From assembly GCF_902459465.1 (NCBI RefSeq), contig NC_047066.1:18476001-18540000 (forward strand): a stretch of 64,000 nucleotides of DNA, in the 5' to 3' direction. The translations under genes were made by a program, and so were the position numbers. This DNA is from Asterias rubens. Its lineage: Eukaryota. Shown piece by piece: positions 15,371-32,368 of this stretch; position 1 is the first letter of the stretch; the number at the start of each line of letters is the position of its first letter. The notes below the pieces were generated by a model that saw nothing but the letters and a program-made list of their open reading frames with translations, was not told where the DNA came from and did no database searches.

Positions 15371-15524
15371 ATAGACCTTTTCGCAAATACCGGGGCGCGC
15401 GCGTAAAGCTTGGAATTAGGTGCATTGTGGTCTAGCTGGTATCCAAATTTGATCCATATATATCCCACAATGCACCTCATTCAACAGTCTGCGCTTGCGC
15501 ATTGGTATTTGCGATAAGGTCTAT
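15371..15524. mobile_element. MITE with ATAGACC...GGTCTAT termini
   Basis: ATAGACCTTTTCGCAAATACC...GGTATTTGCGATAAGGTCTAT. A second family with the same terminal heptamer lies at about 21013-21207 (ATAGACCGATCCA...TGGATCGGTCTAT). Confidence 0.6.
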
Positions 15525-15923
15525 GGAGGTGATACACAAGGCAACTCAAACAGGTGAGTTCGGGCATTGCGGTCGCGCTCTGCAACTTCCGTGTGGGGCG
15601 AAAACGGCATTCTGCGCAGCGTACACTTTATAGTGCGACCTCATGATCTAGGATGTACCGGTACTTAAATTGCCCGGATATGATTTTCAATTTAGAAGTC
15701 CAACAAAAGAGGTCTTTGGATTACAGTGTGGCAAGGAAACAAAAGCCAGACTGTCTCAATTACCATGAAGTTCCTCCGAATCAAAGAAACAAAGGATGCG
15801 GTCTGGATAAAGCCAATGAATGTGACTTGATGGGCTAAGTTCAACGGCCGGTGTGACTGGAAATTGTGTTCCCCAGAGAGCCCCCCCCAAAAAAAAACCC
15901 CGCCCACCAAAGTGGTGAACTAA

Positions 15924-16073
15924 GGGTGCGTTCGTTTAGCTTCCCTGGGTCGACCCCGGTGTGTGGCGGTTTTTTTCCCAGGGCGAACGTGGGTAATTAT
16001 CTAAACACGTTCGTCCTGGAAAAAAAATCGCCACAAACCGGGGTCGACCCAGGGAAGCTAAACGAACGCACCC
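15924..16073. mobile_element. PIF/Harbinger-like (Tourist-type) MITE
   Basis: TAA|GGGTGCGTTCGTTTAGCTTCCCTGGGTCGACCCC...GGGGTCGACCCAGGGAAGCTAAACGAACGCACCC|TAA, a 3-bp TAA TSD. A longer, degenerate copy lies at about 25790-26035. Confidence 0.8.
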
Positions 16074-18447
16074 TAAGTAAAAACTTATTCTGATAGCGCC
16101 CTCTTTTTAATCATACTCCTTCAGCCTGAGTTTCCTGTGGGGACACTGGGTAAACATTCTGAGCGGCTGCCTCTGAAGAAACGTTTAGTTTTTGAGAAAA
16201 TAATTTGATGTTTTATTTCGAGACCTCAGATTTAGAATTTGAAGTCTCGAAATCAAGCATCTAAAAGCACACAACTTAGTGTGACAAGGGTGTTTTTTTT
16301 TTTCATTATTATCTCGCAACTTCAACGACCAATCGAGCTCAAATTTTCACTCTCAGGTTTGTTGTTTAGTGCATAATAGTGAAATACACCAAGTGAGAAG
16401 ACTGGTCTTTGACATTTTTAACAAAGGTGTCCAGTGTCTTTAACTCACGTTGGTGACAATACGCGACCAGACAGAGCGGATAACTTAATTAATTGAGTAA
16501 AATCGAGTCCATAATAAACTTTGAGTGAACTTTAGATGATTTGTTTAGCTCCATTGGGAATTCTGTCTGTGATCCAGTGGGTATTATTACTATAAGTTGT
16601 CATTTCCCGCCGTGAATTGGCTGCAGGTGTTTGCTCCTGCCGCAAAGCTCACATTAAAACATGCAATAATGCAGTTTACTATTAGTCAGTGTGTAGTTTA
16701 CATCAAAGTTAATGTTAAGTGGTTCCTAATTCTTCTATCAGGAAATAATAAGATTGACTCAACACCATAAAGTTAACCATGTTGTTTTTGCAGCCTCGGG
16801 TTTCCGATGTTTTTTTTCCTGATCCAAGTCAAAACGGCCCGGGCAGAATTGTGAAAATTAAACTTTATTAAACTGTATGCATTCTTGGCAAATTCAGTCC
16901 CGAAATGAGAGAATCACCTAATGGGTTTTGAAATGCCACTTCACATTATTAATGTTTGTGCTCACTGAAAAACCTTGTTGGAATTAGTGAGTTTTATAGG
17001 CCTATTACAGAATGTTTCTATAATTTTTCACTTCAATTCCAAATGTACATTCCCTACTTCATGAAAACAGTACATTAAAAACAAAATTTTACAAAGGAGT
17101 AATCCCCGTGCAAGTCCATACATGTTTTAATTAATCAGCCAGCCAGTGTTTTGCTGTTACTGAAAACAAAGGTTCGGGTTGTACCACCCCCAAGAGTGTG
17201 GTCTAATAAGAAAGAGTTTTGGAAAGAAAACACATTCATCACATGGGTCTGTTAGTGTGATCCGCAATACACTTACTAATCTACATAATATGGCCCACTC
17301 ATATCAAAACGTGTTGATTTCGAGGAAGAATTTGTTAGGCTTTTGGATAGACGGACTCGCCATAAAGGTAGGCATACGACTAGAGCCCACTGCCTTTCAG
17401 TTGCCACCACTCAACCACGCCCTTTTGATGCTGCAGTATGGCGTACGAAATTTGTATCACATGTGCCCCGCCTCAAACCATCCCCCATAAATGTAGTCTA
17501 CTTCAAATTACACGCTTACAAACTATTTTGACAGATTGAAAATTGAACTCTGAAAAGTGAAGGGAAACTCGGCCGGGTCAATCGCTCTTGGCCGGAGAAT
17601 GGGACACTTCTCGATGAAGCAGGATTCATTAAAGGAAACGTTGCCTTGGATCGGTCGAGTTGGTCTTTGAAAAGCGTTTGGGACCGTTTGTTATAAAATG
17701 CATATGATTAGAAAGATCATTTAAAAGTAGAATATAATGATCCACACAAGTATCACTCGAAATTGCGTGGTTTTCCTTTTACCTCGCCGACTAACACTGT
17801 CGGCCATAATATGGGAGTCAAATTTTTGACTCCCATGAATGGCCGACAGTGTTAGTTCGCAAAGTAAAAGGCAAACCACGCAATTTCGAGGCAAATTTGT
17901 GTGGATCAATGTATTCTACTTTTAAATCATCTTTCTAACCATATGCATTTTATAACAAACGGTTACAAACAACCAACTCGACCGATCCAAGGCAACGTGT
18001 TCCTTTAAACCCAACTATAGTAGGGAGGCCCAATTGCAGTCACCGCAGTTCAGTGACCGAGTGCAGAGTGACAACGTGCTGGTGGTTGCTGTCCATTACT
18101 TTTCTTATTACGGCGCTCAATTACATGTCATCATTGAAGGTGCAATAGCATTAGGTGTTCAATTTCATGATTGGAGTCTATTTTTTTGCCCTTTTGCTAT
18201 ATTTTTCACTTCGTTGGTTTCCAAATTTATGTGAATTTTTGACAATTTGTAGCGGATTGAACGTTTTGCGGCGTCCGGGTTTCAGACTATAGTACCAATG
18301 CGAAGCATGTCAAAATAGACTGGTGACCTCCCTTACTGTCCTGCTGCCAGTGAATGGTCGACAAAAATCACAGGCTAGAAATCGAAAGAAACAGTTTGGA
18401 GGAAAGTGTAAAGAAGTTGTGTTGTCACTCAAGTTTAGTGAGAAATC

Positions 18448-21400
18448 ATGTCCTGTCAAGAATCACAAGAGGTAAGTTGGGACGTTTCTTCTTTCAATTA
18501 TTGTATTTGTGGTTAATTTTCAATTAAAATTTCTGAATTTACCAGTATTTGCACTCTTCACCTTCACTTCACTTCAGTCCACTCGACTTCAGTTCTTTTT
18601 TATCTTAAATTTATTTTCAATAAAAATTAGGCCAATGTTATAATACTATACTAACTATTAATATTATTATTGTGTTATTTTTTTGTAAATCTTTTTATTC
18701 TACTTTTGATTTATGTTTATTCACAGAGGTTTACTTTACAGTTACACATTAATTTATGATCAAAATTATTTGCTAGCCATGTTATGAAAATATGATGTTA
18801 TTGAATGTCAGATGTCCATGTGTCCCACCCATCCATGGTGATAGTTAGTCATTAGTGAACCTACATTTTAAAATGTTCTTTGTTTAGCACTGCAGTCTGT
18901 TTAGAAAGGATAGTTTTGCCTTCTTGTTTTTATGCCGGCGTAGGCATGATAGGAATGTCCGACAACTCTGCAGACAAATTGACGATTGAGACAACACAAT
19001 GAATGAGTTGTCTGAACTTCAATCCATAGTATTCTTTATTCTGTTTTTGATGCACATTTGTTGCATTTAACAAAACAAATTAACAAAAACTCATTTTGTG
19101 CACCACCATTATGATAAGCCAGAGTTAGTTTAATATGCAGTTTGTTTTTGTTTTCAGGAGGAGAAGGAAGTTCTTCTCTCCATATACGATGGAGATGAAT
19201 GTTTCAAATTAATAGACTCTACGTGTCAATACAGGGTAAGTTCTTCTTCGTCTTCCGTGTAAGTACAGACTCAATCACATGAGCAAAAGCATACTGCGTT
19301 GGCATGCGTGCGTTGGCTCGCAAATGACGAGACATGATAGCAAGAGCAGTTATTTATAGTGCGGTTAAAAAGTGAAAAACATGATGGGTGCAGCTACTTC
19401 AGCCGGTTAACCCTCAGAGCTGCCTTAAAGACCCTGGACACTATTGGTAATTGTCAAAGACCTCACATGGTGTATCTCGACAAATGCATTAAATAACAAA
19501 CCTGTGAAAATTTGAGCTGAACTGGTCGTTGAAGTTGCGAGATAATAATGAAAGAAAAAAAATGCCTTACATGAAGTCGTGTACTTTCAGATGCTTGATT
19601 CGAGATCTCAAATTCTATTAATCTGCGGTCTCGAAATCAAATTCGCAAAAAAATTACTTCTTTCTCGAAAACTGCGTCACTTCAGAGGGAGCCGTTTCTT
19701 ACAATTTGTTATACTATCAACCTCTCCCCATTACTCGCTACTAAGTAAGGTTTTATGCTAATAATTATTTTGAGTAATTACCAATAGTGTCCACTACCTT
19801 TAAAGGTGTTGAGGGATGAGTACAAGGCTGGATCCTTCTGTAGATTGTTCCAATCCCTGATGGTGCGGGGTAAGAAGGAGTTTGTGTACACTGACGAGCT
19901 GGTTTGTGGGATCATAAAGCGAGAGCTGTGACCCCTAGTTATAGATGATAGAGCTAGAGGTATTAACACGCTCCACAGATAGGATAGCAGGCCTCGGCTC
20001 AATTATACCATGGAGGAAGGAACCCATGATTAAAGGAGCCAAGATTGATCTTAAAGGACATTACAGAAGTGGTTTTTGCTAACAAAACGGTAATCCACCA
20101 TATATGTACATTAACTGACAAACCTGTAGAAGTTGGAGATCGATCGGCCATCTGGGTCACGAGAGAATAGTGAAAAACCGATTTTGCATTGCATCAATGA
20201 CATACAAAGAGAACGAAACGCTCACTGAGCGATTAACTCCAAACGTGAAATTAGATTATTTATTTCTCAACAAATATGAAATTTCAAACAAATTATTATT
20301 TCAGGGGATGATTTCTACTATCATCATCATTAGACCATGTAAGTTTTATGTAAATCTGTGATCTTCACGATTTTTTATTCTTACCGTTCCTTTAAGACAA
20401 GTTTGGGCTTGGTTGGAGTAATATTTTCATTGTGTGTTTTTTTCTTCCCCAGGTAGGAGATGAGGGTCATTTTAAGTCATTTATGCTGGAGATCAAATGG
20501 GGAGATAATTATCCAGAAGAATTTCCTGAAATCAGCTTAAATACATTCTACAATAATCACTTGTGAGTACGCACCTGTTTAAGAACACATTTTCAGACTA
20601 GTCTTATCTCTATATAGGACGCGTTACTCGACCTAACTTAGGACTAGCCGTACGTTTTTCATATCTCCTAAGACTAGTCCTAAGATAGGACTAGTCCTAA
20701 CTCTTTGTGAAATCAACCCCTGGACTATTTTAATCATCGGGAGAAAAATTTGTTAGTTTGTATCTTAAAGATAATCATCAGTACAGATCCTAAAGCATCT
20801 AGGCGTATAACCCAGTGGGCAAGGGAGGCAACTGCCGACCAAATTTTATGCAAAGAGAAAAGAAAATGGACAGAGAAAGCAAACTTTACCTATAGTATTG
20901 TTATCAATATTGGTGTTTTAATCTGCTTTAAATTTCTGCCCCTTTAAACCAAAGAGGCCCAAAATGCCCATTTCATCAAGGGAGAATACCGATCTTTAAT
21001 TACAAATTCCCCAATAGACCGATCCAGTAGGCTCCGCCCAAGACACACGTGTGAGCAAGAACGCGTGGAGACCTACAATGCCTTTCTGCACAACTCTGCC
21101 GCTCGCACCAAGATACGCGCAGGCATGTCAGATCTTATTTGTCAGACCTTCGTTGCGTTGTGATTGGTCAGTACGCAATGGGGCGGAGCTTAGTGGATCG
21201 GTCTATTAAGGATTGCATCTTTTGACTAAAGTTGTCTTATGTTTTAATCATCCTTCTACTGTTTCTTAATACAGACAGGATGATATACGAAGTAGTGTGG
21301 TCGAGAAGGTCAAGGCAGAGGTAGGTAGACTGAGCCGGCATGTTATTGTCTGACTGTATATTTATCCTGCTTCACCATATTTCAGTGGGCAAGGGAGTGC

Positions 21401-24400
21401 TTGGTGGGGCCCATCTCCTCTCCAAGCTTCAGTGGCTTTATACAGAGTTGTAGCTAGACAAATTTTAGGAGTTGGCAATAAATAATTTTTGTTCGAAGTC
21501 CACCAAGGGCGAGCGAATCAACAAAGTTATTCATGTTTAAAGATGGGGTCATCATTGCTGAAGTGCAAGCTTATTAAGGCATGATGCAAGGTTTCCAAAC
21601 TGCTCATGTTATTGGCCATGCAATAAGTTGAATGGCCTTTGACTGTGTTCTTTCTCTGTACATTTGATACTTCTTATCATTAGCTGTGTCTCAGATCATT
21701 GCACAATAGACAATATTTTTGATTTATTTTAAGGGGAACTCTGTGCTGGGCAGCACAGTGTGTTTTGCTCAGAGTGCTGGGCAAAAACTGTGAGTCCTGG
21801 GTAGGCCTGCACAGCACCACCCACCAGGGCCCTATTTTATGGCTCTGCTTACCGTAAGCACAGAATCGGCGCTTACGGAAGCAGGGAATTCTGTGCTAAC
21901 GGCAAGCGAATTTGGGCTTCTGCGCGTGCGTACTCCACGTTACTAGGCATTCTACACTTACAAGGCTAGCGCAGAAATTCGGCGCTTGCACGTGAGCGGG
22001 GAATCGTGATCGTAAGCGCAGAATACGGCGGTTAGCAGAGCCATGAAATTGGGCCCAGGGCTACAACACTGTCTGTGTATTAGAGTAGCCTCATCGTGGA
22101 TAAGTTGCGGCCCATAGCTAACAAGTCCCATCTGCCTGGGTTTGAGATCAGAGTTTCCCTTCGCTAGGGTGGGCTGCCTCCTATGGATTACTAGCCCTAC
22201 CTGCCCAGAGCAATCTGGTTTTAAGTCACCAAAAACTCGCCCGTACATCTCTGCCATCAGTATTAAAAACAGTGAGAAGCCAAGCAGTAGGCCTTCGCTT
22301 AGGAGAGACTATTTGAGACGCTGGCATATAGGAGTGGCTTAGTTCTCTATATCACCCCACCCATTCTAAACTTTGATTTCCAGTATAGCAGTTTCAGCAA
22401 TTAGAGTCGCCATACCACTGATCTATTGTTATCAAAAAAGTTTCCTACTTGTATATTACCACTGAAGTATCTGATCTTATCAATAAAGTTTCCAACTTAT
22501 ATGCTAATTTTCCAACTCGTTTCTGATCAAAACCCTCCTTTTCTTTCAACAGGCAGAACAGTGGCTTGGGTGTGCAATGACCTACACATTATTTGAGTGG
22601 GCAAAGGAAAATGCTGAGGATCTAATGGCAGAACAAACAGAAGCTCAAATGACTGTTCGAGTAAGTGCAGCTTCCCGAAATTGTCATGGATCATTCGCCA
22701 AATTTTAGTTTATGGCCAACTTCTGAAGAATATTCTTTTTTATTTATAAGTTATACACCTCCATATTACAAGCGCCAATAACAGGATGAATGGGAAACAA
22801 GAATAAAATAGTTTTAGATGTGGAAGGAAAACCCCAAATGGGGAAAACCCCCCCGCAACTGAAAACCACATCCACATTCAAGGCTCCAGTCTGAGGTGGG
22901 ATTTGAACCAGGGATCACAGAGGGGAAAGGCATGTAAAGAAACCACTTAGCCAACCTGATCCAACTTAAGTATTAACCTTGATTCGCTATTCCTATTGGT
23001 GGAGAGCGCGTCACGTGGGTGTGTATAAACCTTTGTTTATGACCAGTAAAAAGTGTTGAAACATGGGCGTGACACGCGAGTTTGCACCTGTGCTTATAAG
23101 ACAGTTTCTTCATTCCTGTTGGTCGAGAGCAACGGCCGGGACAGTTGTGCTACATCACGCGATACGCGCGACGCGCACATCATTCCCTTATAAGGAGTTG
23201 TTTACCCGAGGGCGACGGAGGGCCTTACCATTTCATAGCTGGAGGGGTGTTGTGTTGAAAAAATGTGACCAAAAGTGTTGATGTTTTTTGAGCGAAAAGG
23301 TATTTATGAGTGGGGATCAAAGTGTGTTGAATCGGTATTCAACTAGTGGTTTAAACACGCCGAGGCCTGGTCCTTGATAATTTACCTCGACTTTGTCTCG
23401 GTAAAATTATCAAGAACCAGGCCTCGTTAGGATTAAACCACTAGGTGAAAACCTCTTCACCACACATTGATTCCCTTGTTAGATTTTGTCTGTATACGGT
23501 ACTTGTAGACCTAAGTCTATGCGATTGTAACAATTTAGCATCATGATGAATAGTTGGAACAATGCCAGCAACATTATCCTGGTGTGCTGTAAGGTCTCAT
23601 TGATCATTCTTTAAAGACATTGGACACTTTTGGTAATTGTCAAAGACTAGTCTTCACATTTGATGTATCTCAACATATGCATAAAATAACAAACCTGTGA
23701 AAATTTGAGCCCAATAGATCGTCGAAGTTGCGAGAGATTAATGAAAGAAAAAACACCCTTGTCGCACCATGGTCACACAAAGTTGTGTGTTTTCAGATGC
23801 TTGATTTCGAGAACTCAAATTCTAAATTTGAGGTCTCGAAATCAAATTTGTGGAAAATTACTTCCTTCCCCAAAACTACGTCACTTCAGAGGGAGCTGTT
23901 TCTCACAATGTTTTATACTATCAACGTCTCCCCATTACTTGTAATCAAGAAAGGTTTTATGATAATAATTATTTTGAGTAATTACCAATAGTGTCCACTG
24001 CCTTTAATATTGGGTTATTATTAAAATAATTTTTTTTTTTCCTGGAACAGAGTTCCAGTAATACAGAACAAGCTGTGGCAAAAACGAAAGAGAAAAAGGA
24101 ACAGCTGACAAAGGCGCAGAAACGAAAAATTGCTAATAGAACAGGTAGGCTTTTACTGTTTCTTACACTCTTCTTGAGAGGTATGTTACAAGGTGCTCTG
24201 GCACAATATGCTGCCAATCAAAGCAGGAACACCTGGGCGAACCCCTTCTCTTTTTGATGAGTGCACTGGGTTCTTTTAGGTCCATTGCACAACACACAGG
24301 ATCAGTGGCTTGAAGCAGTCATAATGGTTAAAGGAACATGTTGCCTTGGATCGGTCGAGTTTGTCTTTGAAAAGCGTTTGTAACCGTTTGTTATAAAATG

Positions 24401-27014
24401 CATATGGTTAAATAGATGTTTTAAAAGTAGAATACAATGATCCACACACATTTGCCTCGAAATTGCTTTGTTTTCCTTTTACTTTGCGAACTAACACGGT
24501 CGGCCATTTATGGGAGTAAAAATTTGACTCCCATAAATGGCCGACCGTGTTTGTCGACGAGGTAAAAGAAAAACCACGCAATTTCGAGTGATACTTGTGT
24601 GGATCATTATATTCTAATCATATGCATTTTATAACAAACGGTTACAAACGCTTTTTAAAGACCAACTCGACCGATCCAAGGCAACGTGTTCCTTTAAGTG
24701 TCTTGTAAGGACACAAGTGTCACGACTGTGACTCAAACCCGCATCTGCTGAACAGAAACACCAGAGCTTGTGTCCCGTGCTCTTATTTGCTCGGCCACGA
24801 CACGCCATATTTATGGGGTGTCGTGGTCGTGTGGATAAGAGCACCGAACTCAAGCTCTGGTGTTTCTGCTCAGCAGAGTGTGGGTTCGAATCCCAGTCGT
24901 GACACTTGTGTCCCTGAGCAAGACACTTTACTATAATTGTTTCTCTCCACCCAGGGGTAAATATCGACTAGTCACCTGAAATAAACCATGTTATATTTGT
25001 TTTACTATACTTTATATGGATTCAGTTACCGAAACGTGATTTGAAGCAAGGGAAAATGAAAACTGTGAAATAAAATGCACATGATAGTTTGTTTATGTGT
25101 TGGATGTCGCTGGAGAGAGTGATGTTCGTGCGTGTGTACAAAACAGTACCACGATCATAAAGCACATGACAAGTAGACTATCGCCCGGGCTGACCGGTCG
25201 TACAATGGTAAATTCACGTGACAAGTAGACTAGCGTAGGGCTGCCTGGGTGCTATTCTACTTGTCATGCGCATTTACATGTACCATGTGCGTGATTGCTA
25301 GCATGCACGCTTGGTAAACGAAACACCAACACTCTCCAGACATTCAAGAGTAAACTAAAGACACATCTATTCTCTTCTCGCTCATAAACTTACTTTTTCG
25401 TAGCTCTCTTACCAGCGCATTGTATCTTGTAAAATGTGCTTTATATGTCTTGTTTCTTCTTATTATTATTATTATAAATAGCAAAAAAGCACCTGGCACG
25501 TGATAATGAAAGGACCAGTAAGAATTTGACTCTCGGTCATGAATATGTACAATGTACATGTATGAGGTATAGTATTACAATTTTACTATTAATGCACATT
25601 TGGGCATAATGTATTTTGTATTATTTATTACCTTTACAGATCACAGAGGAGATCTACCCAGAGGTTTTGACTGGGTTGATATAGTCAAGGTGAGTTGCCT
25701 ATAATTTTATGCAAATTTCTCACTGGGCAAAATCTTTACTGTAAAATAGATTAAAGCAATTAAAGTTTTGTTTGTACTATCAGACAATGGGTGCGTTCGA
25801 TTAGCTTCCACGGGTCAACCCCGGTAAGACGTACGAATAGCTTTTGTGTAATTTTAGGGGCTCACCCGGGTCATCCCCAAGTGCCCTGCTTGTGGAACAG
25901 GTCACTTGGGGCTGGCCCGAGGTGCATAACGTCATCACGAGAGGGTGAGTGATCATTCAATTCACTCTTGTCAGGGGCTCACCCGAGTGAGCACCGCGCG
26001 CGGTCGTCACAGGGAAGCCCAATCGAACGCACCTAGAGATACCAACCTTACCCTATTAGACTTTTAAATAGTAATATTGAAGTAAAAGTAGATGTTTAAT
26101 ATGCATTGGTGATAAAGAATATTTATTTTGGTTTTTACCCTTTACACTGATGTGCGTAGGCACTGTGCTTACACACAGTGTAAAGGGTACATCGGTGTTA
26201 AAGGAAGAGTACACGTTTGGTAATTGTAAAAGACCAGTCTTCTCATAAAATAACAAGCCTGTGAAAATTTGGGCTCAATTGGTCATCAAAGTTGCGAGAA
26301 AATGATGAAAGAAAAAAACACCCTTGTTGGACGAATTTGTGTGCTTTCAGATAAGAATAAAAGACTTCTAGCTAGAAATCTTTTATTATTTTAGTGAGAA
26401 ATTACCTTTTTTTCAAAAACTATGTTACTTCAGAGGGAGCCGTTTCCACAATGTTGTATACTATCAACATCTCTCCAATGCTCGTTACCGAGCCAGTTTT
26501 TAAGTTAATATTATTTTGTTTTGAGTAATTACTAAACGTGTACCTTTCCTTTAAGTGCTTACACACATTGGTGTAAGGGTACAAAACAAAATTAACATTG
26601 AAGTTGCCATTTATGCAATAATGTGATGATATTGTCCCTTACACATTGCATTTGTCTTCTTCTTCCAAACGAATTTGAACACCCTCTACAAACTCACTGC
26701 CATCTGCTTCATCGTCTCAGCATGTAAGTATTACACTTGATAAATTAATACACAAAACAAGATATTAAACATGAAATTATTGTATGCACTTTTTATGATC
26801 TCTTCGGCTATTCAAAGAGGTTTTGCTCTTAACACTTGCCTGGCACCTTAGTTAAGCGCAAGGCTTGTTGGTTATCAAACTAAGGGCTGACAATATTGCT
26901 GTCATAGTTTGAATTCTGTGTGAGCTCGAACGTGCCAACAATCTGGTTTCTTTTTAAATACAGCTCAGCAAGACAGGTTTCTCTAAGACACAGGAAGGTG
27001 AAAAGGAAAGCTGA
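18448..27014 (+). CDS. RWDD4: RWD domain-containing protein 4, about 187 aa, multi-exon
   Basis: Exons, all GT-AG and frame-consistent: 18448-18471, 19158-19235, 20453-20562, 21275-21320, 22553-22660, 24051-24144, 25640-25689, candidate microexon 26721-26723, 26964-27014. Translation includes EVLLSIYDGDECF, LEIKWGDNYP, LGCAMTYTLFEWAKEN, KEKKEQLTKAQKRK, DHRGDLPRGFDWVDIVK(H)LSKTG, matching RWDD4 as I recall it. Confidence 0.92.
19803..20005 (-). mobile_element. 3' remnant of a non-LTR retrotransposon ORF2
   Basis: The frame reads TRGHSSRF...VYTNSFLPRTIRDWNNL, a typical C-terminal motif (SFFPRTIRxWNxL) of CR1/L2-like and related LINE ORF2 proteins. It is truncated at a family A TTAA boundary. 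Confidence 0.6.
20055..20391. mobile_element. TTAA-flanked element with asymmetric ends (family F)
   Basis: TTAA|AGGACATTACAGAA...TTCTTACCGTTCCT|TTAA. The right part is the reverse complement of the family C arm. Confidence 0.6.
21828..22055. mobile_element. PIF/Harbinger-like MITE (GGCCC termini, CWG TSD)
   Basis: CAG|GGCCCTATTTTATGGCTCTGCTTACCG...GCAGAGCCATGAAATTGGGCC|CAG. Related copies at about 61958-62213, 57410-57572 and 7990-8415. Confidence 0.7.
22860..22965 (-). mobile_element. tRNA-derived SINE head (second family)
   Basis: The minus strand reads GGATCAGGTTGGCTAAGTGG (A box)...GGTTCAAATCCC (B box)...TGAATGTGGATGTGG. Confidence 0.5.
22975..23479. mobile_element. Dispersed 500-bp repeat with an internal AACCAGGCCTCG hairpin
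   Basis: A near-identical reverse-orientation copy lies at about 31201-31690 (SHPK intron 1) and a partial copy at 14955-15100. One end reads AAGGGAATCAATGTGTGG. Confidence 0.7.
24152..24806 (-). mobile_element. tRNA-derived SINE interrupted by a family B MITE (24332-24693)
   Basis: Head GGCGTGTCGTGGCCGAGC (A box) with a degenerate B box GGGTTTGAGTC. The body GACACTTGTGTCC...GACACTTAA resumes as CCATTATGACTGCTTC...AAGAACCCAGTGCAC on the far side of the MITE. Confidence 0.65.
24815..24962 (+). mobile_element. tRNA-derived SINE, 5' part
   Basis: GGGGTGTCGTGGTCGTGTGG (A box) and GGGTTCGAATCCC (B box), followed by GACACTTGTGTCCCTGAGCAAGACACTT...CTCTCCACCCAGG. No complete cloverleaf. Confidence 0.7.
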
Positions 27015-29538
27015 CTTCTGTCTTGAAGGTATACCATTGTTATAGATCTTATACACGGCACTACTGGAATATGGCACTCCCTGATAGAAGGTTGCTTATC
27101 GGCCCACCACGTGCATTGTGCTGACATGGCTCTACGCGTCCACTGTGTCATCATTATTTTACGTCTGGATGATGGCAGGTTGATGTCTTAAGGTCATCAG
27201 TGCTACAGTGATTTCCCTCAAAGGCATTGCACACGTTTGGTAATTACTCAAAATATATAATTAGCATGAATTGTTTTTGGAAACTATATTTAGCATCGGA
27301 GAGCTGTTGATAGTAATAAACGTTGTGAGAAACGGCTCCCTCTGAAGTAAAGTAGTTTTTGAGAAATAGGTAATTTCTCACTCAAATATTTGAATCTGAG
27401 AAACACGTCAGGCCTGAAGCCTTTCTCAGGCATCTGAAAGCACACACATTAATTGTGCAGCAATGGTGTTTTTTCTTTCAAATCTTGCAAGTTTTATGAC
27501 TAATTGTGTCCAAAGTTTCACAAATTTGTTAGTTTATGCAGATGTTGGGATACACCAAGTGAGACTACTGGTCTTTGACAATTACCAAACGTGTTCAGTG
27601 CCTTTAAATCGACTCTGTATTTGAAAGCAGAGAACAAGTATGATGCGTCCTGAGAAATATTCCCAATTCAGGTGCTGTAGTTTGTAGGAAAAAAAGAAAT
27701 CCATCAATTTGGTTTGTTTAACCATTGTTTTAAAAATAAGTTACCCCTCGCACAAAGCCGAACACATCTTTGCATTTTGTGCATCTACCATAGCTGCCAT
27801 TTTAGGAGTTGGGTCTTTGTGTATATTTTGACTCCCAAAATGGCAGACAGTTAAGGCGCTTGGTGTTGGTGGTTTATAGTGCCCTCGATCTTTTGTCAGA
27901 ATTTATCCATTTCGCCTAAAATTGATTTGGCCCAAAACTAACATAACGCCCATGGATCCCATGACTTAATCTTGTCAACAAAAAGTCACGAATTTTAAAT
28001 AAAATATTTACAATCTCCTATTAAAGGTAGGGTACAGTTTGGGTAAATGTCAAACACCAGTATCACCGCTTGGCGTATCGCAACATGCATAAAATGACAA
28101 TAAGTCCCTGTGACAATATTGAAAGAAAAACCACCCTCTTTGCATAGAATGGTGAGCTTTCAGATGCCTGATAAAGACTTCATGCCTGAAGTCTTTCCCA
28201 GATTTGTTTGTAAAACTACATTACTTCAAAGTGCTTGTTACCAAGTAAGGTTTTTTATGGTCATTATTTTTTGGAGTAATTACCAAAAGTGTACCCTTCC
28301 TTTGATGAACTACGAACCAATAAATTGGTTAGAAAACATATCAGACTCTAAACATGCATCACTGAAAGAATTCTACAATGCGAGACAGTTTCAGTTGTGC
28401 CAATATTTCATCCATTTAATAGTTAAGACCTTCATAAAAGACGAAGGCAAATGAATTTTTCTGTCATGTTCTCTGTTTATGATACTGTTCCGCTTGTTGA
28501 ACATGATGTCTATTTTGTGGGAGATGAAATAAAATATACAATTTTAACATGACTTGAGTAAGAGTTGTCAAAATTGTTGTCTAGTAAGGTTTAGTCTATG
28601 AGCCACAGCAGGCACTGTTGGTGGTAACTCGGCTAAGAAAATCTCAGTTGAGTAGCTACTACATGTAAAGTAATGGAGAGACCACACTGGGTCTCAGAAC
28701 TAACACTTCTCCCAAAAGAGTTTTATAAATGGTTGTATTAAATGTACCTAGCCCTGGCGGCCTTACACTTGCGTATTATACTACAGTGACGTCCTGGATA
28801 TCAGGGTCCATTTCTGGGGCGGAAACATTTCAAAGCTTCATAACTCAAATCTTACCTGCAAGAAACCACTAATTTCACCAGATTCACATTCCATGGCAGC
28901 ATAAATTAGTTCACGAAAATGACAGATTTGTGAAGAATATATGACGACCAAAACCCCCCGCAGAAGAATGTATGCCGCCATAGAATGTGAATCTGTTGAA
29001 ATTAGTGGCTTGTTGCAGGTAAGATTTAGGTTATGAAGCTTTGAAAATTTTCCGCCCCAGAAACGGGCCTTAATAGTTAGGACTCTGTATCTGTGTACAG
29101 AGAAAGAGTCCTGTATAGGGCTATAATGTACCCACAAGTTTACTCCTATAGTTTTTCCACACAATGCAAAGTTTCAAACACCACTTAATATGTAGTATGC
29201 AGGAATTGCAACTCATTGTTCTTTCATAGGGCATAGTAGTAGCCAGAGGGGTGTCTGGGTGTCTTTTGGACACCCCGTTGTAAATGTGGACAGCCTGTTT
29301 TATCTAAACTTTCAGCAGATTTTGACACCTTTTCCCAAATCCTCCCGGCTAAAACCTTGTCATCAGATCAGGCTCTGAACCAACAAGTAATGAAAATTTG
29401 ATGTTTTATTTGTTGACATGTTTATTTATTGACAGAATGTCTCAGGGAATCAATATAATTCATCAGTTTATACTTTTTTTTATTCTAACTGCAAATGTAC
29501 TGTACATGGACCTTTTCTACTATTTACAAACCTATCTG

Positions 29539-29697
29539 TTATATTAGCATTGCCATAGCTGCACCTTGAGCAGCATCCCCACCCTGTCCATGTACAACAG
29601 GCATCTTAAAAACCCTCTCCAACTCCTGCATCAAGACTGGATTCCTCCGCATTGCACTTCCGCACCCAACTATCCTCCCTACCCCTCTACCAATCAA
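29539..29697 (-). repeat. Tandem duplicate of the last 159 bp of the SHPK CDS
   Basis: Aligns to 29726-29884 at an offset of 187 bp, with 6 substitutions by my count and no indels. Confidence 0.9.
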
Positions 29698-29725
29698 TTC
29701 CCTATTGTTCACAGGAGCTGCTTTG

Positions 29726-32368
29726 TTACATTAGCATTGCCATAGCTGCACCCTGAGCAGCATCCCCACCCTGTCCATGTACAACAGGCATCTTAAAAAC
29801 CCTCTCCAACTCCTGCATCAAGACTGAATTCCTCCGCAATGCACTCCCGCACCCAACTATCCTCCCTACCCCTCTATCAATCAAATCATCTCTCGACATC
29901 ATGCTATGGAGGTTTGTAATAATCCCACAACACAAGGCTCGTGAGATATCACCGACCCTCATATTCCCAGGCGCCAGATTCTCAACACTAGCTCTCTGAG
30001 ATGGTGCGTGTCTCTCACCATAAAGTGTCGGGCGAATCAGAATGCTTGTATCTTTCACTTCCAGACCCTTCTCGATAAATTTCTTGTAAGCATCCTCTTT
30101 TGAGATGCTGAGACCAAAGTCTTCGGCTAGTTGACATAAAGATGAGACACAGTCTGCGATGACATTGCCTCCTGTCAGGGCTGCTGCGACTGCAAGGTAT
30201 TGGCCTTTAAAGAAGGGGAAGTATTCGATGGTAGAGCTAGGAGTTGACTTCGGTGGATCAAAGCCTGCTGGGGTACTGGTCACAAGCTGTGCAGATGTAC
30301 CGATATTCACAACTAAAAGAGAGAAGAGTGATCATTGCGTATGCAAATACAGTGTATCAAATGATGTTTGGGCAACTGTGGATAGCCACCTTTCCATTTT
30401 AAACTCCGTTTCCACAAACTCAATTTTACACCGATTTATACTAAACTGCAATCAAGCCCAAGGGTCAAAAGTAATAAGAAATACAAGCAACTGTTTGGAA
30501 AATAACCTTCACATCTTATCTGTACTGACCAATAGTGCAGATGTAACATGAGTTTTGCTGATTTTGCAACAAAGAAAATAAGTAGAAAAACTCTTACATT
30601 GATCGCTTCCTTTTAGATTATTGTAAAAGATGTTTTGTCTGTTTGTATGGAAAATGAATGAGTGTAATGACTCTGGTAGGTCGAGGGAGGATTTGTGTTG
30701 GTTTAAGGGAAGTACTTTTCAGATATAAATAATGTGTACCTGCATCTGATGGCGATTGTAACAATGGCAATACAGAGCAAGGCAAGTCTCCCATAGCAAC
30801 TCCAACCTTACAGCCTGCTGGAATACTGTGCCATGGTGACCCGAGTTGACCCACAATGACCCCTGGGTCAACGACCTCTGGTAACAGATGAACTGGGAAC
30901 CCTGCAGCTGTCAGGCTGTAGATTTCAAAATGAAAAACCAAAGGATTATGTCTGCCACATAAGTTCTATTCAAAGTGTTTTGGTGACTGCTTTGATATAC
31001 TACTACTAGTACTAGGCTATCCCGCCTTGTTGGGCTGTTTTTTATGGCTGTCTTTAAAAAAGAAAAACAAAATCATTTAGACAGCTCTGATGGGATTTGC
31101 GTTTTAAAAAAAAACGGTTTGTTTTCCGTGTTTGATTCACATTAATACATCGTTACAAATTTATGACTTCACAAAATGTTAGAATGCTAGAGTTTACGTT
31201 AATAAGGGAATCAATGTGTGGTAAAGAGGTTTTCAACTAGTGATTTAAACCCGCGCTGAGGCCAGGACTTGATCATTTTACCGAGACAAAGTCGAGGTAA
31301 ACTATCAAGAACCAGGCCTCGGCGGGTCTGAACAACTAGTTGAAAACTAAATCAACACACTTTGATTCACATTCATAAATACCTTTTCGGTCAAAAAACA
31401 TCAACACTTTTCAACACAACACCCCTCCAGCTATGAAATGGTAAGGCCCTCGGGTAAACAACTCCTTATAAGGAGATGCTGTGCGCATCGCGTATTGCGT
31501 AATGTTGCACAACTGTTTCAACCGTTGCTCTCGACCAATAGGAATGAAGAAAATTTCTTAAAAGCACAGGTGCAAGCGCGCGTGTCACGCCCATGTTTTA
31601 ACACTTTTTACTGGTGTTGTATCTTTCGTTCAAACAACCCCTTGTGATGCCCTCTCAACCAATCAGAATGGATAAACTGTCTTAGGTATTTATGAATGCA
31701 GTATATTTACAGTTCCCTTACATTTCCTTATTCCATGACTTTTCGGACACATTGAAATACCCCCAGCTAGCAGCATTCTGTATCCCCATAACAGGTTTAT
31801 CCAAGCCACACAGCCTAGCAACCAAGAGATCCATAATAGTTCCCGCATGTGTGAATTTCTCCAAGTACTCCGGGTTGTTTCGCTGAAACCAAAACAACGT
31901 CACGCAGCCATGACCCGTAGCGAGTCTTAGATGGGTGTCCGGAGTGGGGAGGCTTGCAATGAAATCCTCAGTACATCTCAAATCTTCCCATGTAACAAGT
32001 GGACTTGTTGTAATCAAATCATCATTGAACCCTTTGATTGTACTCGCTCCTGCCAATTCCAGTTGGTCAACCACGGCATGTGATGACCAGCAGACACAGC
32101 CGTGCATCTGACCCGTGATGCCGACGCGTTTCACCCGGGAGAGTTTCTCTGAGTCGAGCCTACTCAAACAAGTCTCGCAAGTTTCCATGATTTTACTAGT
32201 TAGTTGTTCAGCTGCTCCAGGTGGCTGTGATGAACAAACGAACTTTGAATGCGTGTCACACGATGCACTTTGAATGGTTTCTTTACCGTCGTACAGAGAA
32301 ACTTTCACAGACGTTGTGCCCAAATCTATGCCCAACACAAGCCCCGTTTCTTGTGTTTCTAGCTCCAT
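29726..32368 (-). CDS. SHPK: Sedoheptulokinase (FGGY carbohydrate kinase family), 3 exons
   Basis: Exons (-): 32368-31722, 30915-30740, 30312-29726, with compatible phases 2 and 1 and GT-AG sites. Motifs: LGIDLGTTSVK, GITGQMHG, TWEDLRC, LATGHGC, GTIMD, QNAASWGYF, MGDLPCSV, VNIGTSAQL, VAAALTGGN, PTLYGERH, GCGSAL, DAAQGAA. Confidence 0.93.

What the first reader, a model, noticed from the sequence alone, without database searches (positions are those of the whole stretch)
26640..26730. Candidate 3-nt (single His codon) microexon in RWDD4
Exon 7 ends ...WVDIVK| and the last exon begins |LSKTG, whereas vertebrate RWDD4 as I recall reads WVDVVK-H-LSKTG. Inside the intervening intron is TCTCAG|CAT|GTAAGT (CAT = 26721-26723): an acceptor, exactly one His codon, and a consensus donor. 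Upstream are a displaced pyrimidine tract (TTTGTCTTCTTCTTCC), a CTCAC branch-like site and two TGC motifs near the AG. That layout resembles microexons regulated by SRRM3/4 (eMIC-domain) factors, which are typically neural. Inclusion and skipping both keep the frame. Failure to use the donor would give an alternative end, HVSITLDKLIHKTRY*. Automated annotation usually misses such exons.
Basis: partly seen in the sequence, partly recalled or inferred. Interest (0 to 1): 0.75.

Follow-up and report, generated by a model that had tools for sequence, protein, structure and literature searches.

The report
Ancient three-base exon in starfish RWDD4
A gene piece only three DNA letters long, encoding one histidine, really lies in the last intron of the starfish RWDD4 gene; public annotation already includes it, and starfish, acorn worm, fish and frog share the same piece and its unusual flanking layout, so it is probably over 500 million years old.

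Summary
TCTCAG|CAT|GTAAGT lies at 26715-26729 in the intron between exon 7 (25640-25689, ...WVDIVK) and the last exon (from 26964, LSKTG...).

The window is Asterias rubens. A nine-exon model that includes CAT (26721-26723) translates exactly to RefSeq XP_033628052.1 (187 aa, ...VDIVKHLSKTG...), so the exon is already annotated.

- **His is near-universal.** It follows the K in 116 of 126 full-length RWDD4 relatives and in 38 of 38 ORFs from transcript assemblies.
- **The core is shared.** CAGCATGTRAGTA is an isolated 3-nt exon in the homologous intron of A. amurensis, Patiria, the hemichordate Ptychodera (its annotated protein lacks His), Xiphophorus and Xenopus. It is the only conserved island in otherwise unalignable introns.
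- **Other lineages differ.** Amphioxus and the urchin Diadema have AAA-CAT|GTAAGT, with His fused to exon 7. Brachiopod, annelid and cnidarian have no intron there.
- **The layout is shared too.** A displaced pyrimidine tract and a 60-140-nt AG-free spacer precede the acceptor in all six microexon-bearing species.

The SRRM3/4 neural-switch reading is untested and unlikely as the main mode, because the His form is the canonical protein everywhere.

I did not see Asterias junction reads: repeats swamped the one reads call.

The scan had noted a 2-nt microexon elsewhere in this genome.

The parts
18448..18471 (+). RWDD4-like exon 1 (coding part, MSCQESQE)
   Evidence: Peptide located. It is part of the 9-exon model that equals P0039.
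19158..19235 (+). Exon 2 (EEKEVLLSIYDGDECFKLIDSTCQYR)
20453..20562 (+). Exon 3 (RWD domain core)
21275..21320 (+). Exon 4
22553..22660 (+). Exon 5 (AEQWLGCAMTYTLFEWAKEN...)
   Evidence: It was the query that retrieved the Asterias RefSeq proteins.
24051..24144 (+). Exon 6 (basic linker)
25640..25689 (+). Exon 7, ends ...WVDIVK in phase 0 with donor GTGAGT
26638..26642 (+). CTTAC, candidate distal branch site just upstream of the pyrimidine run (inferred)
   Evidence: Conserved in A. amurensis. A yUnAy site sits in the same relative place in Ptychodera, Xiphophorus and Xenopus.
26651..26666 (+). Displaced pyrimidine tract; its 12-nt pure run ends 54 nt before the exon
   Evidence: Displaced tracts occur in all six microexon-bearing species.
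26604..26718 (+). AG-free stretch of 115 nt preceding the acceptor AG; contains UGC at 26698-26700 and 26705-26707
   Evidence: Stretches this long are 0.2% of AG-AG gaps in the window. The other five species have 60-140 nt.
26719..26720 (+). Acceptor AG of the microexon
26721..26723 (+). 3-nt microexon CAT (His171 of the 187-aa protein)
   Evidence: It is required to reproduce XP_033628052.1 exactly. It is conserved in five other species.
26724..26730 (+). Donor GTAAGTA, full consensus match
   Evidence: GTRAGT is invariant in 8 deuterostome species, including the two where His is fused to exon 7.
26964..27014 (+). Last coding exon LSKTGFSKTQEGEKES + stop; the 3' UTR continues (AATAAA at 27315 and 27998)
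   Evidence: RNA contig pieces of runs X2 and X3 begin exactly at 26964 (table 8, records 22 and 30).

Best explanation
CAT 26721-26723 is a genuine internal coding exon of three nucleotides in the Asterias rubens RWDD4 orthologue. It supplies the single His of the metazoan-wide C-terminal motif W-V-D-[VI]-[VI]-K-H-L-S-K-T-G.

It is most likely included in most or all RWDD4 mRNA, that is, constitutive or nearly so, because the His form is the canonical protein in every animal group examined.

The exon is old. The intron after the His is shared by all deuterostomes examined. The intron before it, which isolates the His codon, is present in vertebrates, hemichordates and sea stars. From mis-annotated proteins I infer it is also present in crinoids, brittle stars and sea cucumbers. 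It has been lost precisely in amphioxus and in the sea urchin Diadema.

Inferred mechanism: an exon this small cannot hold U2AF/U2 at its acceptor and U1 at its donor side by side. Three conserved features probably solve this:
- a perfect donor (GTAAGTA);
- a branch site and pyrimidine tract pushed 30-80 nt upstream;
- an AG-free spacer, so that the first AG after the tract is the acceptor.

This layout spaces the two recognition complexes roughly one normal exon length apart. Alternatively or additionally, it lets the two introns be removed one after the other, with the downstream intron first turning CAT plus the last exon into an ordinary terminal exon.
For: **Shown**
- Window 15448-30014 is identical to A. 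rubens LR699096.1.
- The nine-exon model with CAT equals RefSeq XP_033628052.1; without it the protein is one His short.
- The residue after the K is His in 116 of 126 full-length relatives and in 38 of 38 ORFs from transcript assemblies.
- HLSKTG is not contiguous in the genome of Asterias, Patiria, Xiphophorus or Xenopus, although their proteins have K-H-L.
- CAGCATGTRAGTA occurs exactly once, on the gene strand and in the homologous intron, in every locus with a K|...|L split, and in none of the other five loci (alignment).
- In intron-versus-intron blastn, that 13-15-nt core is the top hit against Patiria, Xiphophorus and Xenopus and the second hit against Ptychodera.
- Amphioxus and Diadema read AAA CAT|GTAAGT. 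Lingula, Owenia and Actinia have no intron there.
- Displaced pyrimidine runs and AG-free stretches of 60-140 nt occur in all six species.
- Logan contigs of 1-2 kb carry whole ORFs with K-H-L and group with a sea cucumber and a brittle star, whose genome annotations run into the intron after K.

**Literature**
- Microexons have strong donors and Py/BP signals farther from the AG (bioRxiv 10.1101/2024.09.17.613571, read).
- Steric hindrance and downstream-intron-first removal are proposed for very short microexons (PMC10250204, read).
Against: - No Asterias read or contig crossing the exon 7 / CAT / last-exon junctions was seen. The single read-laying run was flooded by intronic repeats, and the relevant joints were among the rows not shown.
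- The RefSeq model could in principle have been shaped by protein homology rather than by reads.
- Four genome-annotation proteins (Ptychodera, Glandiceps, Antedon, Scyliorhinus isoform X2) lack the His, so some real skipping cannot be excluded.
- The steric and sequential-splicing mechanism is inference; no splicing order was measured.
- One gain plus two losses of the upstream intron is only slightly more parsimonious by event count than two gains plus one loss.
Confidence: 0.85

Rival explanations
1. The exon is real but works as a regulated, neural-enriched cassette. Its inclusion depends on an eMIC-domain SRRM2/3/4-type factor, and other tissues make a His-less RWDD4.
For: - The upstream layout matches what is described for SRRM3/4-dependent microexons: displaced Py/BP, a UGC between tract and AG, and a strong donor.
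- UGC lies within 30 nt of the AG in 5 of 6 species.
- Skipping keeps the frame.
- NCBI lists a His-less isoform X2 in a shark, and His-less models exist in two hemichordates and a crinoid.
Against: - The His is invariant in animals where it cannot be skipped: cnidarian, annelid, brachiopod, amphioxus, urchin.
- All 38 transcript-assembly ORFs carry it.
- RefSeq gives no spliced His-less form for either Asterias species or, among the hits returned, for Patiria.
- Patiria has no UGC between tract and AG.
- No RWDD4 entry was found in the main text of any microexon paper or in the supplementary tables of three microexon studies.
- The same layout is also what any ultra-short exon would need for steric reasons.
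Confidence: 0.12
2. The AG-CAT-GTAAGT is a chance splice-like motif. Asterias RWDD4 simply lacks the His, and the RefSeq model was forced to fit homologous proteins.
For: - No junction read from Asterias was seen here.
- AG-CAT-GT without an extended donor does occur by chance; there are two such sites in the Diadema intron.
Against: - The expected number of AGCAYGTRAGT in this intron is about 0.002.
- The identical 13-mer sits in the homologous intron of six further loci from three phyla and nowhere else in those loci.
- It is the only, or nearly the only, alignable island between these introns.
- It survived repeat insertions that changed the intron from 780 to 1274 nt between the two Asterias species.
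Confidence: 0.02
3. The isolated His exon arose independently in vertebrates and in ambulacrarians by separate intron gains at the K|H boundary, rather than being inherited from the deuterostome ancestor.
For: - Amphioxus and Diadema lack the upstream intron.
- Event counts are close: two gains plus one loss against one gain plus two losses.
- The K|H boundary (AAG|C) partly resembles a proto-splice site.
Against: - The position and phase are the same, and CAG|CAT|GTRAGTA is identical in all lineages.
- The unusual upstream architecture is also the same in frog, fish, hemichordate and sea stars.
- Precise intron loss is commoner than parallel gain at one site (general knowledge).
- The urchin's lack of the intron is clearly derived within echinoderms, given that four other echinoderm classes have, or are inferred to have, an intron after K.
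Confidence: 0.2

Closest known systems
Conserved 3-nt microexons described in other genes: TLN1 (PMC4317164), MAP4K5 (PMC8632122), cytohesin-1 (PMC6314551), Drosophila homothorax micro-Ex8 (PMC7392893)
   Same: - A single codon forms an internal exon with canonical AG/GT flanks.
- The reading frame is preserved.
- It is conserved across species and is hard for aligners and annotation pipelines.
   Different: - By the titles and passages seen here, those are alternative or are reported as conserved within mammals, within vertebrates or within flies.
- This one restores an invariant residue of the canonical protein, so it is probably constitutive.
- It is shared between vertebrates, a hemichordate and sea stars.
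- No paper in the searched library mentions it.
SRRM3/4 (eMIC)-dependent neural microexons
   Same: - A strong donor.
- Pyrimidine tract and branch site displaced upstream.
- UGC between tract and AG in most species.
   Different: - Neural restriction and dependence on the factor are untested.
- The encoded residue is universal in the family rather than an isoform-specific insert.
- Patiria lacks the UGC.
Recursive splice sites (juxtaposed 3' and 5' splice sites, AG|GTAAGT) in long introns
   Same: An acceptor and a consensus donor lie almost on top of each other inside what looks like one long intron. Stepwise removal of the two halves is plausible.
   Different: - Three nucleotides are kept in the mRNA and are coding.
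- The introns are short (about 0.1-3 kb).
- This comparison rests on general knowledge and was not tested here.
2-nt microexon in RasGRP noted by this scan in the same genome (s1-150075)
   Same: An ultra-short exon is needed to give the canonical protein, and distant relatives share it.
   Different: - It is a different gene.
- A 2-nt exon changes the frame if skipped, whereas this one does not.
- I did not check that finding.

Membership tests
Internal coding microexon (3 nt) | Canonical AG acceptor and GT donor directly flanking the segment, on the gene strand, inside the intron | tested here: met
   TCTCAG|CAT|GTAAGTA at 26715-26730. It is the only AG-CAY-GT in the intron.
Internal coding microexon (3 nt) | Inclusion is needed to give the orthologous or annotated protein, and the frame is kept | tested here: met
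   The nine-exon model with CAT equals XP_033628052.1 exactly. Flanking exons are both phase 0.
Internal coding microexon (3 nt) | Exon and its splice signals conserved in orthologous introns | tested here: met
   CAGCATGTRAGTA occurs once each in the homologous intron of A. amurensis, Patiria, Ptychodera, two Xiphophorus assemblies and Xenopus. It is the conserved island in intron blastn.
Internal coding microexon (3 nt) | RNA molecules that contain both junctions | tested here: inconclusive
   - Asterias: the read-laying output was swamped by repeats; only the acceptor at 26964 is seen in RNA contigs.
- Indirect support: transcript-assembly ORFs grouping with holothuroids and an ophiuroid carry K-H-L.
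- Indirect support: the Xenopus protein named MGC89285 has K-H-L while its genome has the isolated CAT. That MGC names mark cDNA clones is my own knowledge.
SRRM3/4 (eMIC)-dependent neural microexon | UGC motif between pyrimidine tract / branch site and the acceptor AG | tested here: met
   - A. rubens has UGC at -23 and -16.
- It is also present in A. amurensis, Ptychodera, Xiphophorus and Xenopus.
- It is absent in Patiria.
- With about 0.4 expected by chance per 30 nt, this is weak evidence.
SRRM3/4 (eMIC)-dependent neural microexon | Weak proximal 3' splice-site context with displaced Py/BP, and a strong 5' splice site | tested here: met
   Pyrimidine runs end at -23 to -56. AG-free stretches are 60-140 nt. 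The donor is GTRAGTA in all six species.
SRRM3/4 (eMIC)-dependent neural microexon | Inclusion restricted to or strongly enriched in neural tissue | not tested
   - No tissue-resolved reads could be laid; run identities were coded and the one call was used.
- Indirect evidence points against it: the His is universal, and 38 of 38 assembled transcripts carry it.
SRRM3/4 (eMIC)-dependent neural microexon | Inclusion depends on the eMIC-domain factor | not testable with these tools
   This needs knock-down or ectopic expression.
RWDD4 orthologue | N-terminal RWD domain plus the conserved basic linker and the ...RGWxWVDVVKHLSKTG tail; best hits are RWDD4 of other animals | tested here: met
   Pfam RWD covers residues 5-107 with E = 1.2e-18. 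There are 594 relatives, and the named ones among the 120 listed are called RWD domain-containing protein 4. Echinoderm classes are recovered in the tree.

The most novel reading that the evidence does not exclude
The RWDD4 His codon is a three-nucleotide exon inherited from the last common ancestor of deuterostomes. Its recognition architecture has been kept for more than half a billion years: a distal branch site and pyrimidine tract, an AG-free spacer and a perfect donor. If so, it would be among the oldest and smallest conserved exons known. It would also be a natural model of how the spliceosome handles an exon too small for exon definition, because amphioxus and sea urchin have independently lost the upstream intron. 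In addition, its skipping might be regulated, by an eMIC factor or otherwise, in some tissues.
Probability: 0.6. Interest if true: 0.6.

Novelty: already known. Interest (0 to 1): 0.42.

Why it matters
**For this genome.** The exon is real and the public annotation is right, so nothing needs correcting.

**For annotation elsewhere.** The same exon is missed in several other deuterostome annotations:
- His-less models in Ptychodera, Glandiceps and Antedon;
- models that read into the intron in Amphiura and Apostichopus.

A simple rule, CAG|CAT|GTRAGTA in the intron after ...VVK, would probably correct them. I confirmed this at the genome level only for Ptychodera.

**For splicing biology.** A one-codon exon shared by starfish, acorn worm, fish and frog, together with its unusual upstream layout, is a compact test case for how ultra-short exons are recognised. 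Two lineages that fused the codon to the upstream exon serve as natural controls. I found no paper describing it.

Tried and rejected
1. **Read laying.** I laid window 22300-27800 on four RNA runs at 85% likeness. Intronic repeats drew tens of thousands of contigs, and the joints at 25689/26721/26964 were among the rows not shown. The only usable results were that contig pieces start exactly at 26964 and that depth is zero over 26716-26899.

2. **The look-up of sequencing runs.** The first call got no answer. All runs returned by the other two are Logan contigs with coded names, so no tissue could be chosen.

3. **Junction pattern in JGI metagenome contigs.** No match.

4. **C-terminal 48 residues as a protein query, to catch short transcript fragments from Asterias.** One unrelated-species fragment was found, and it carries K-H-L.

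5. **P0002 look-up by exact sequence.** Not on record; the longer isoform P0040 worked.

6. **Alternative sources of the His.** I rejected an alternative donor of exon 7, a NAGNAG acceptor of the last exon and a split codon. No CAY adjoins either splice site, and both exons are phase 0.

7. **The second AG-NNN-GTRAGT in the intron (AG|AGG|GTGAGT at 25940).** It encodes Arg, and its surroundings (about 25796-25979) show repeat-level depth. A. amurensis has no AG-NNN-GT site in the corresponding part of its intron.

8. **Literature.**
   - No paper holds both RWDD4 and microexon.
   - No title among the 15 listed RWDD4-plus-splicing papers concerns this exon.
   - No RWDD4 in the supplementary tables held for three microexon studies.
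   - No supplementary files are held for a fourth study.

9. **Earlier notes of this scan.** None on this place; none on RWDD4.
Full report
**What is in the sequence.**
One search shows ...CTCACTGCCATCTGCTTCATCGTCTCAG|CAT|GTAAGTATT, with CAT at 26721-26723.
- TTTGTCTTCTTCTTCC at 26651-26666;
- CTCAC at 26693-26697;
- two TGC, at 26698-26700 and 26705-26707.

Exon 7 runs 25640-25689 and ends GTCAAG|gtgagt in phase 0. The last exon begins at 26964, acag|CTCAGC..., and encodes LSKTGFSKTQEGEKES*. Reading through the CAT donor gives HVSITLDKLIHKTRY*.

**Chance.**
AGCAYGTRAGT occurs once in the window on both strands. Shuffles give 0.18 per 128 kb, which is about 0.002 for this 1274-nt intron. It is the only AG-CAY-GT in the intron.

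**Identity of the gene and the window.**
A phmmer search with exon 5 returned a 187-aa protein. One search names it RWD domain-containing protein 4-like of Asterias amurensis (XP_071790491.1). Its cluster also holds the A. rubens protein XP_033628052.1 (P0039).

The A. rubens locus fetched by exact protein look-up (L001; GCA_902459465.3, LR699096.1:18491448-18506014) is identical to window 15448-30014.

The nine-exon model is 18448-18471, 19158-19235, 20453-20562, 21275-21320, 22553-22660, 24051-24144, 25640-25689, 26721-26723 and 26964-27014. All junctions are AG/GT. It translates exactly to P0039. Leaving out CAT gives ...VDIVKLSKTG..., one residue short.

So the public RefSeq model of this genome already uses the three-base exon. 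The claim that annotation misses it does not hold here.

**The His is the canonical state of the protein.**
I took the full-length relatives among the proteins retrieved and counted the residue after the K:

| Residue after K | Count (of 126) |
|---|---|
| His | 116 |
| Gln | 3 |
| Absent | 4 |
| Replaced by intron read-through (V...) | 3 |

- The four His-less proteins are all genome-annotation models: Ptychodera flava, Glandiceps talaboti, Antedon mediterranea and Scyliorhinus canicula isoform X2.
- The read-through proteins are A. amurensis isoform X1, Amphiura filiformis and Apostichopus japonicus.
- All 38 ORFs that come only from assembled contigs of 1-2 kb (Logan, JGI, EukProt) carry K-H. 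Because these contigs hold a whole ORF of an intron-rich gene, I infer they are spliced transcripts.
- In a maximum-likelihood tree, three of these ORFs group with Apostichopus (two ORFs) and Amphiura (one ORF) with support of 99-100. So holothuroid-like and ophiuroid-like mRNAs contain the His that those genome annotations miss.

**Comparative gene structure.**
I fetched orthologous loci by exact protein look-up and mapped the peptides on either side.

| Species (locus) | State at the K-H-L boundary | Flanking introns (nt) |
|---|---|---|
| A. rubens (window) | Isolated CAG\|CAT\|GTAAGTA | 1031 / 240 |
| A. amurensis (L002) | Isolated CAG\|CAT\|GTAAGTA | 345 / 432 |
| Patiria miniata (L003) | Isolated CAG\|CAT\|GTAAGTA | 1681 / 1138 |
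| Ptychodera flava (L005) | Isolated CAG\|CAT\|GTAAGTA | 396 / 694 |
| Xiphophorus (L007, L008) | Isolated CAG\|CAT\|GTAAGTA | 116 / 75 |
| Xenopus tropicalis (L012) | Isolated CAG\|CAT\|GTGAGTA | 148 / 502 |
| Branchiostoma belcheri (L006) | AAA CAT\|GTAAGT: His fused to exon 7 | downstream intron only |
| Diadema antillarum (L004) | AAA CAT\|GTAAGT: His fused to exon 7 | downstream intron only |
| Lingula (L009), Owenia (L011), Actinia (L010) | K-H-L contiguous | no intron |

In the first six species the genome has ...VK|gt and ag|LSKTG but no contiguous HLSKTG.

- The 13-mer CAGCATGTRAGTA occurs exactly once in each of the seven fetched loci with a split boundary (L001 is the window's own sequence). 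It is always in that intron and on the gene strand, and it occurs in none of the other five loci. One search gives the alignment.
- In blastn of the A. rubens intron against each orthologous intron, that core is the top hit for Patiria, Xiphophorus and Xenopus and the second hit for Ptychodera. Nothing else aligns convincingly.
- Between the two Asterias species the intron differs by several hundred bases of inserted repeats, yet the exon and its 115-140-nt upstream region are kept.
- The two chance AG-CAT-GT sites in the Diadema intron have poor donors (GTTAGA, GTCTGT). This shows what chance matches look like.

**Conserved recognition architecture.**
- In all six microexon-bearing species the main pyrimidine run is displaced upstream. 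It ends at -54, -55, -56/-37, -38, -32/-23 and -41. In four of the other seven acceptors of the A. rubens gene such a run ends 2-8 nt before the exon.
- The stretch free of AG before the acceptor is 115, 140, 106, 63, 60 and 78 nt. Each value lies in the top 0.1-4.5% of AG-to-AG gaps of its locus.
- A yUnAy branch-like site sits immediately upstream of the pyrimidine run in all six species:

| Species | Branch-like site |
|---|---|
| Both Asterias | CTTAC |
| Patiria | CTTAT |
| Ptychodera | CTTAC |
| Xiphophorus | TTGAC |
| Xenopus | CTGAC |

- UGC occurs between tract and AG in five of the six species; Patiria lacks it.
- Exon 7 ends AAG wherever an intron follows it. It ends AAA in amphioxus, Diadema and Owenia, where none does.

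**How it most likely works.**

*Shown.* The exon, its conservation, its necessity for the canonical protein and the shared layout.

*Inferred.*
- A 3-nt exon cannot be recognised by exon definition, because the complexes on the two splice sites would collide. Steric hindrance is discussed for short microexons in PMC10250204.
- The displaced branch site and pyrimidine tract with an AG-free spacer put U2/U2AF 30-80 nt from the perfect U1 site. This is the layout reported for microexons in general: Py and BP farther from the AG, and strong 5' splice sites (10.1101/2024.09.17.613571).
- Stepwise removal is also plausible. Downstream-intron-first is the commoner order for SRRM4-dependent microexons and tends to go with shorter ones. 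It would turn CAT plus the last exon into an ordinary terminal exon. The amphioxus and urchin genes look like the product of the other order fixed in DNA.

**Evolution (inferred by parsimony).**
- No intron is present here in the cnidarian, annelid and brachiopod.
- The intron after His is present in all deuterostomes sampled.
- The intron before His is shown in vertebrates, a hemichordate and sea stars. From K-L or K-V... models it is inferred in crinoids, brittle stars and sea cucumbers.
- One gain on the deuterostome stem plus two precise losses (amphioxus, echinoid) is my preferred history. Two gains plus one loss is not excluded.

**The neural SRRM3/4 reading.**
The cis layout fits that class. 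But the same layout is what any ultra-short exon needs, and the following points argue against a neural-only exon:
- the encoded residue is invariant even where it cannot be skipped;
- every assembled transcript has it;
- RefSeq lists no spliced His-less form in either Asterias species or, among the hits returned, in Patiria;
- RWDD4 does not appear with microexons in the searchable literature or in the supplementary tables held for three microexon studies.

I put regulated, neural-enriched use at about 0.12. It remains untested because no tissue-resolved reads were available.

**Gaps.**
- I did not see an Asterias read across the two junctions. The single read-laying run was swamped by repeats at 23588-24139, 24324-24691, 26164-26531 and 27268-27635.
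- It did show RNA contigs of two runs starting a piece exactly at 26964, and no depth over 26716-26899, so there is no sign of donor read-through.
- The RefSeq model may owe something to protein homology.
- The function of the C-terminal tail, and so of the His, is unknown. Pfam covers only the RWD domain (residues 5-107), and the only solved relative covers that domain alone.

**Verdict.**
- The microexon interpretation is supported.
- The regulatory interpretation is not supported so far.
- The exon is already in public annotation of this genome. What I could not find described anywhere is its conservation across three deuterostome phyla together with its recognition layout.

Noticed in passing
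L005:12202-12214 (Ptychodera flava); proteins P0042, P0043, P0057, P0044, P0056: Several public annotations mis-model this exon. Ptychodera, Glandiceps and Antedon proteins read K-L without His, although Ptychodera has an intact CAG|CAT|GTAAGTA in the intron. Amphiura and Apostichopus proteins run into the intron after K and end early.
   Followed up: partly
window 23588-24139, 24324-24691, 26164-26531, 27268-27635: Intronic and 3'-flank repeats have enormous summed depth in RNA contigs of runs under three organism labels (depths far lower in the third). There are many opposite-strand joints between copies, for example 23675/27542 and 26244/27546. They look like an abundant short interspersed or foldback element family, and they make read-laying on this locus uninformative.
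   Followed up: no
window about 25753-26037 and 26155-26563: These segments of the A. rubens intron upstream of the microexon have no counterpart in the A. amurensis intron. They are probably lineage-specific repeat insertions, and the microexon region just downstream is untouched.
   Followed up: partly
window about 29726 onward, minus strand (L001:14279-14567); L003:15796-17265: A FGGY-family carbohydrate kinase gene lies tail-to-tail just downstream of RWDD4 in both A. rubens and Patiria miniata. This is conserved local synteny.
   Followed up: no
proteins P0084 (Arapaima), P0127 (Scleropages), P0141 (Leptobrachium): Three vertebrate RWDD4 proteins read K-Q-L instead of K-H-L. This could be a CAA/CAG version of the 3-nt exon or an acceptor shift. 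No genome was examined.
   Followed up: no
window 25687-25689 and the orthologous codon in L002-L012: The Lys codon ending exon 7 is AAG in every species where a donor follows it. It is AAA in amphioxus, Diadema and Owenia, where none does. This is consistent with splice-site constraint on the last exon base.
   Followed up: partly
P0040 (A. amurensis isoform X1); window 25690-25704: NCBI lists an A. amurensis isoform that retains the intron after exon 7 (…VDIVKVSCLYANF…, 202 aa). In A. rubens the same read-through stops after four codons (VSCL*).
   Followed up: no
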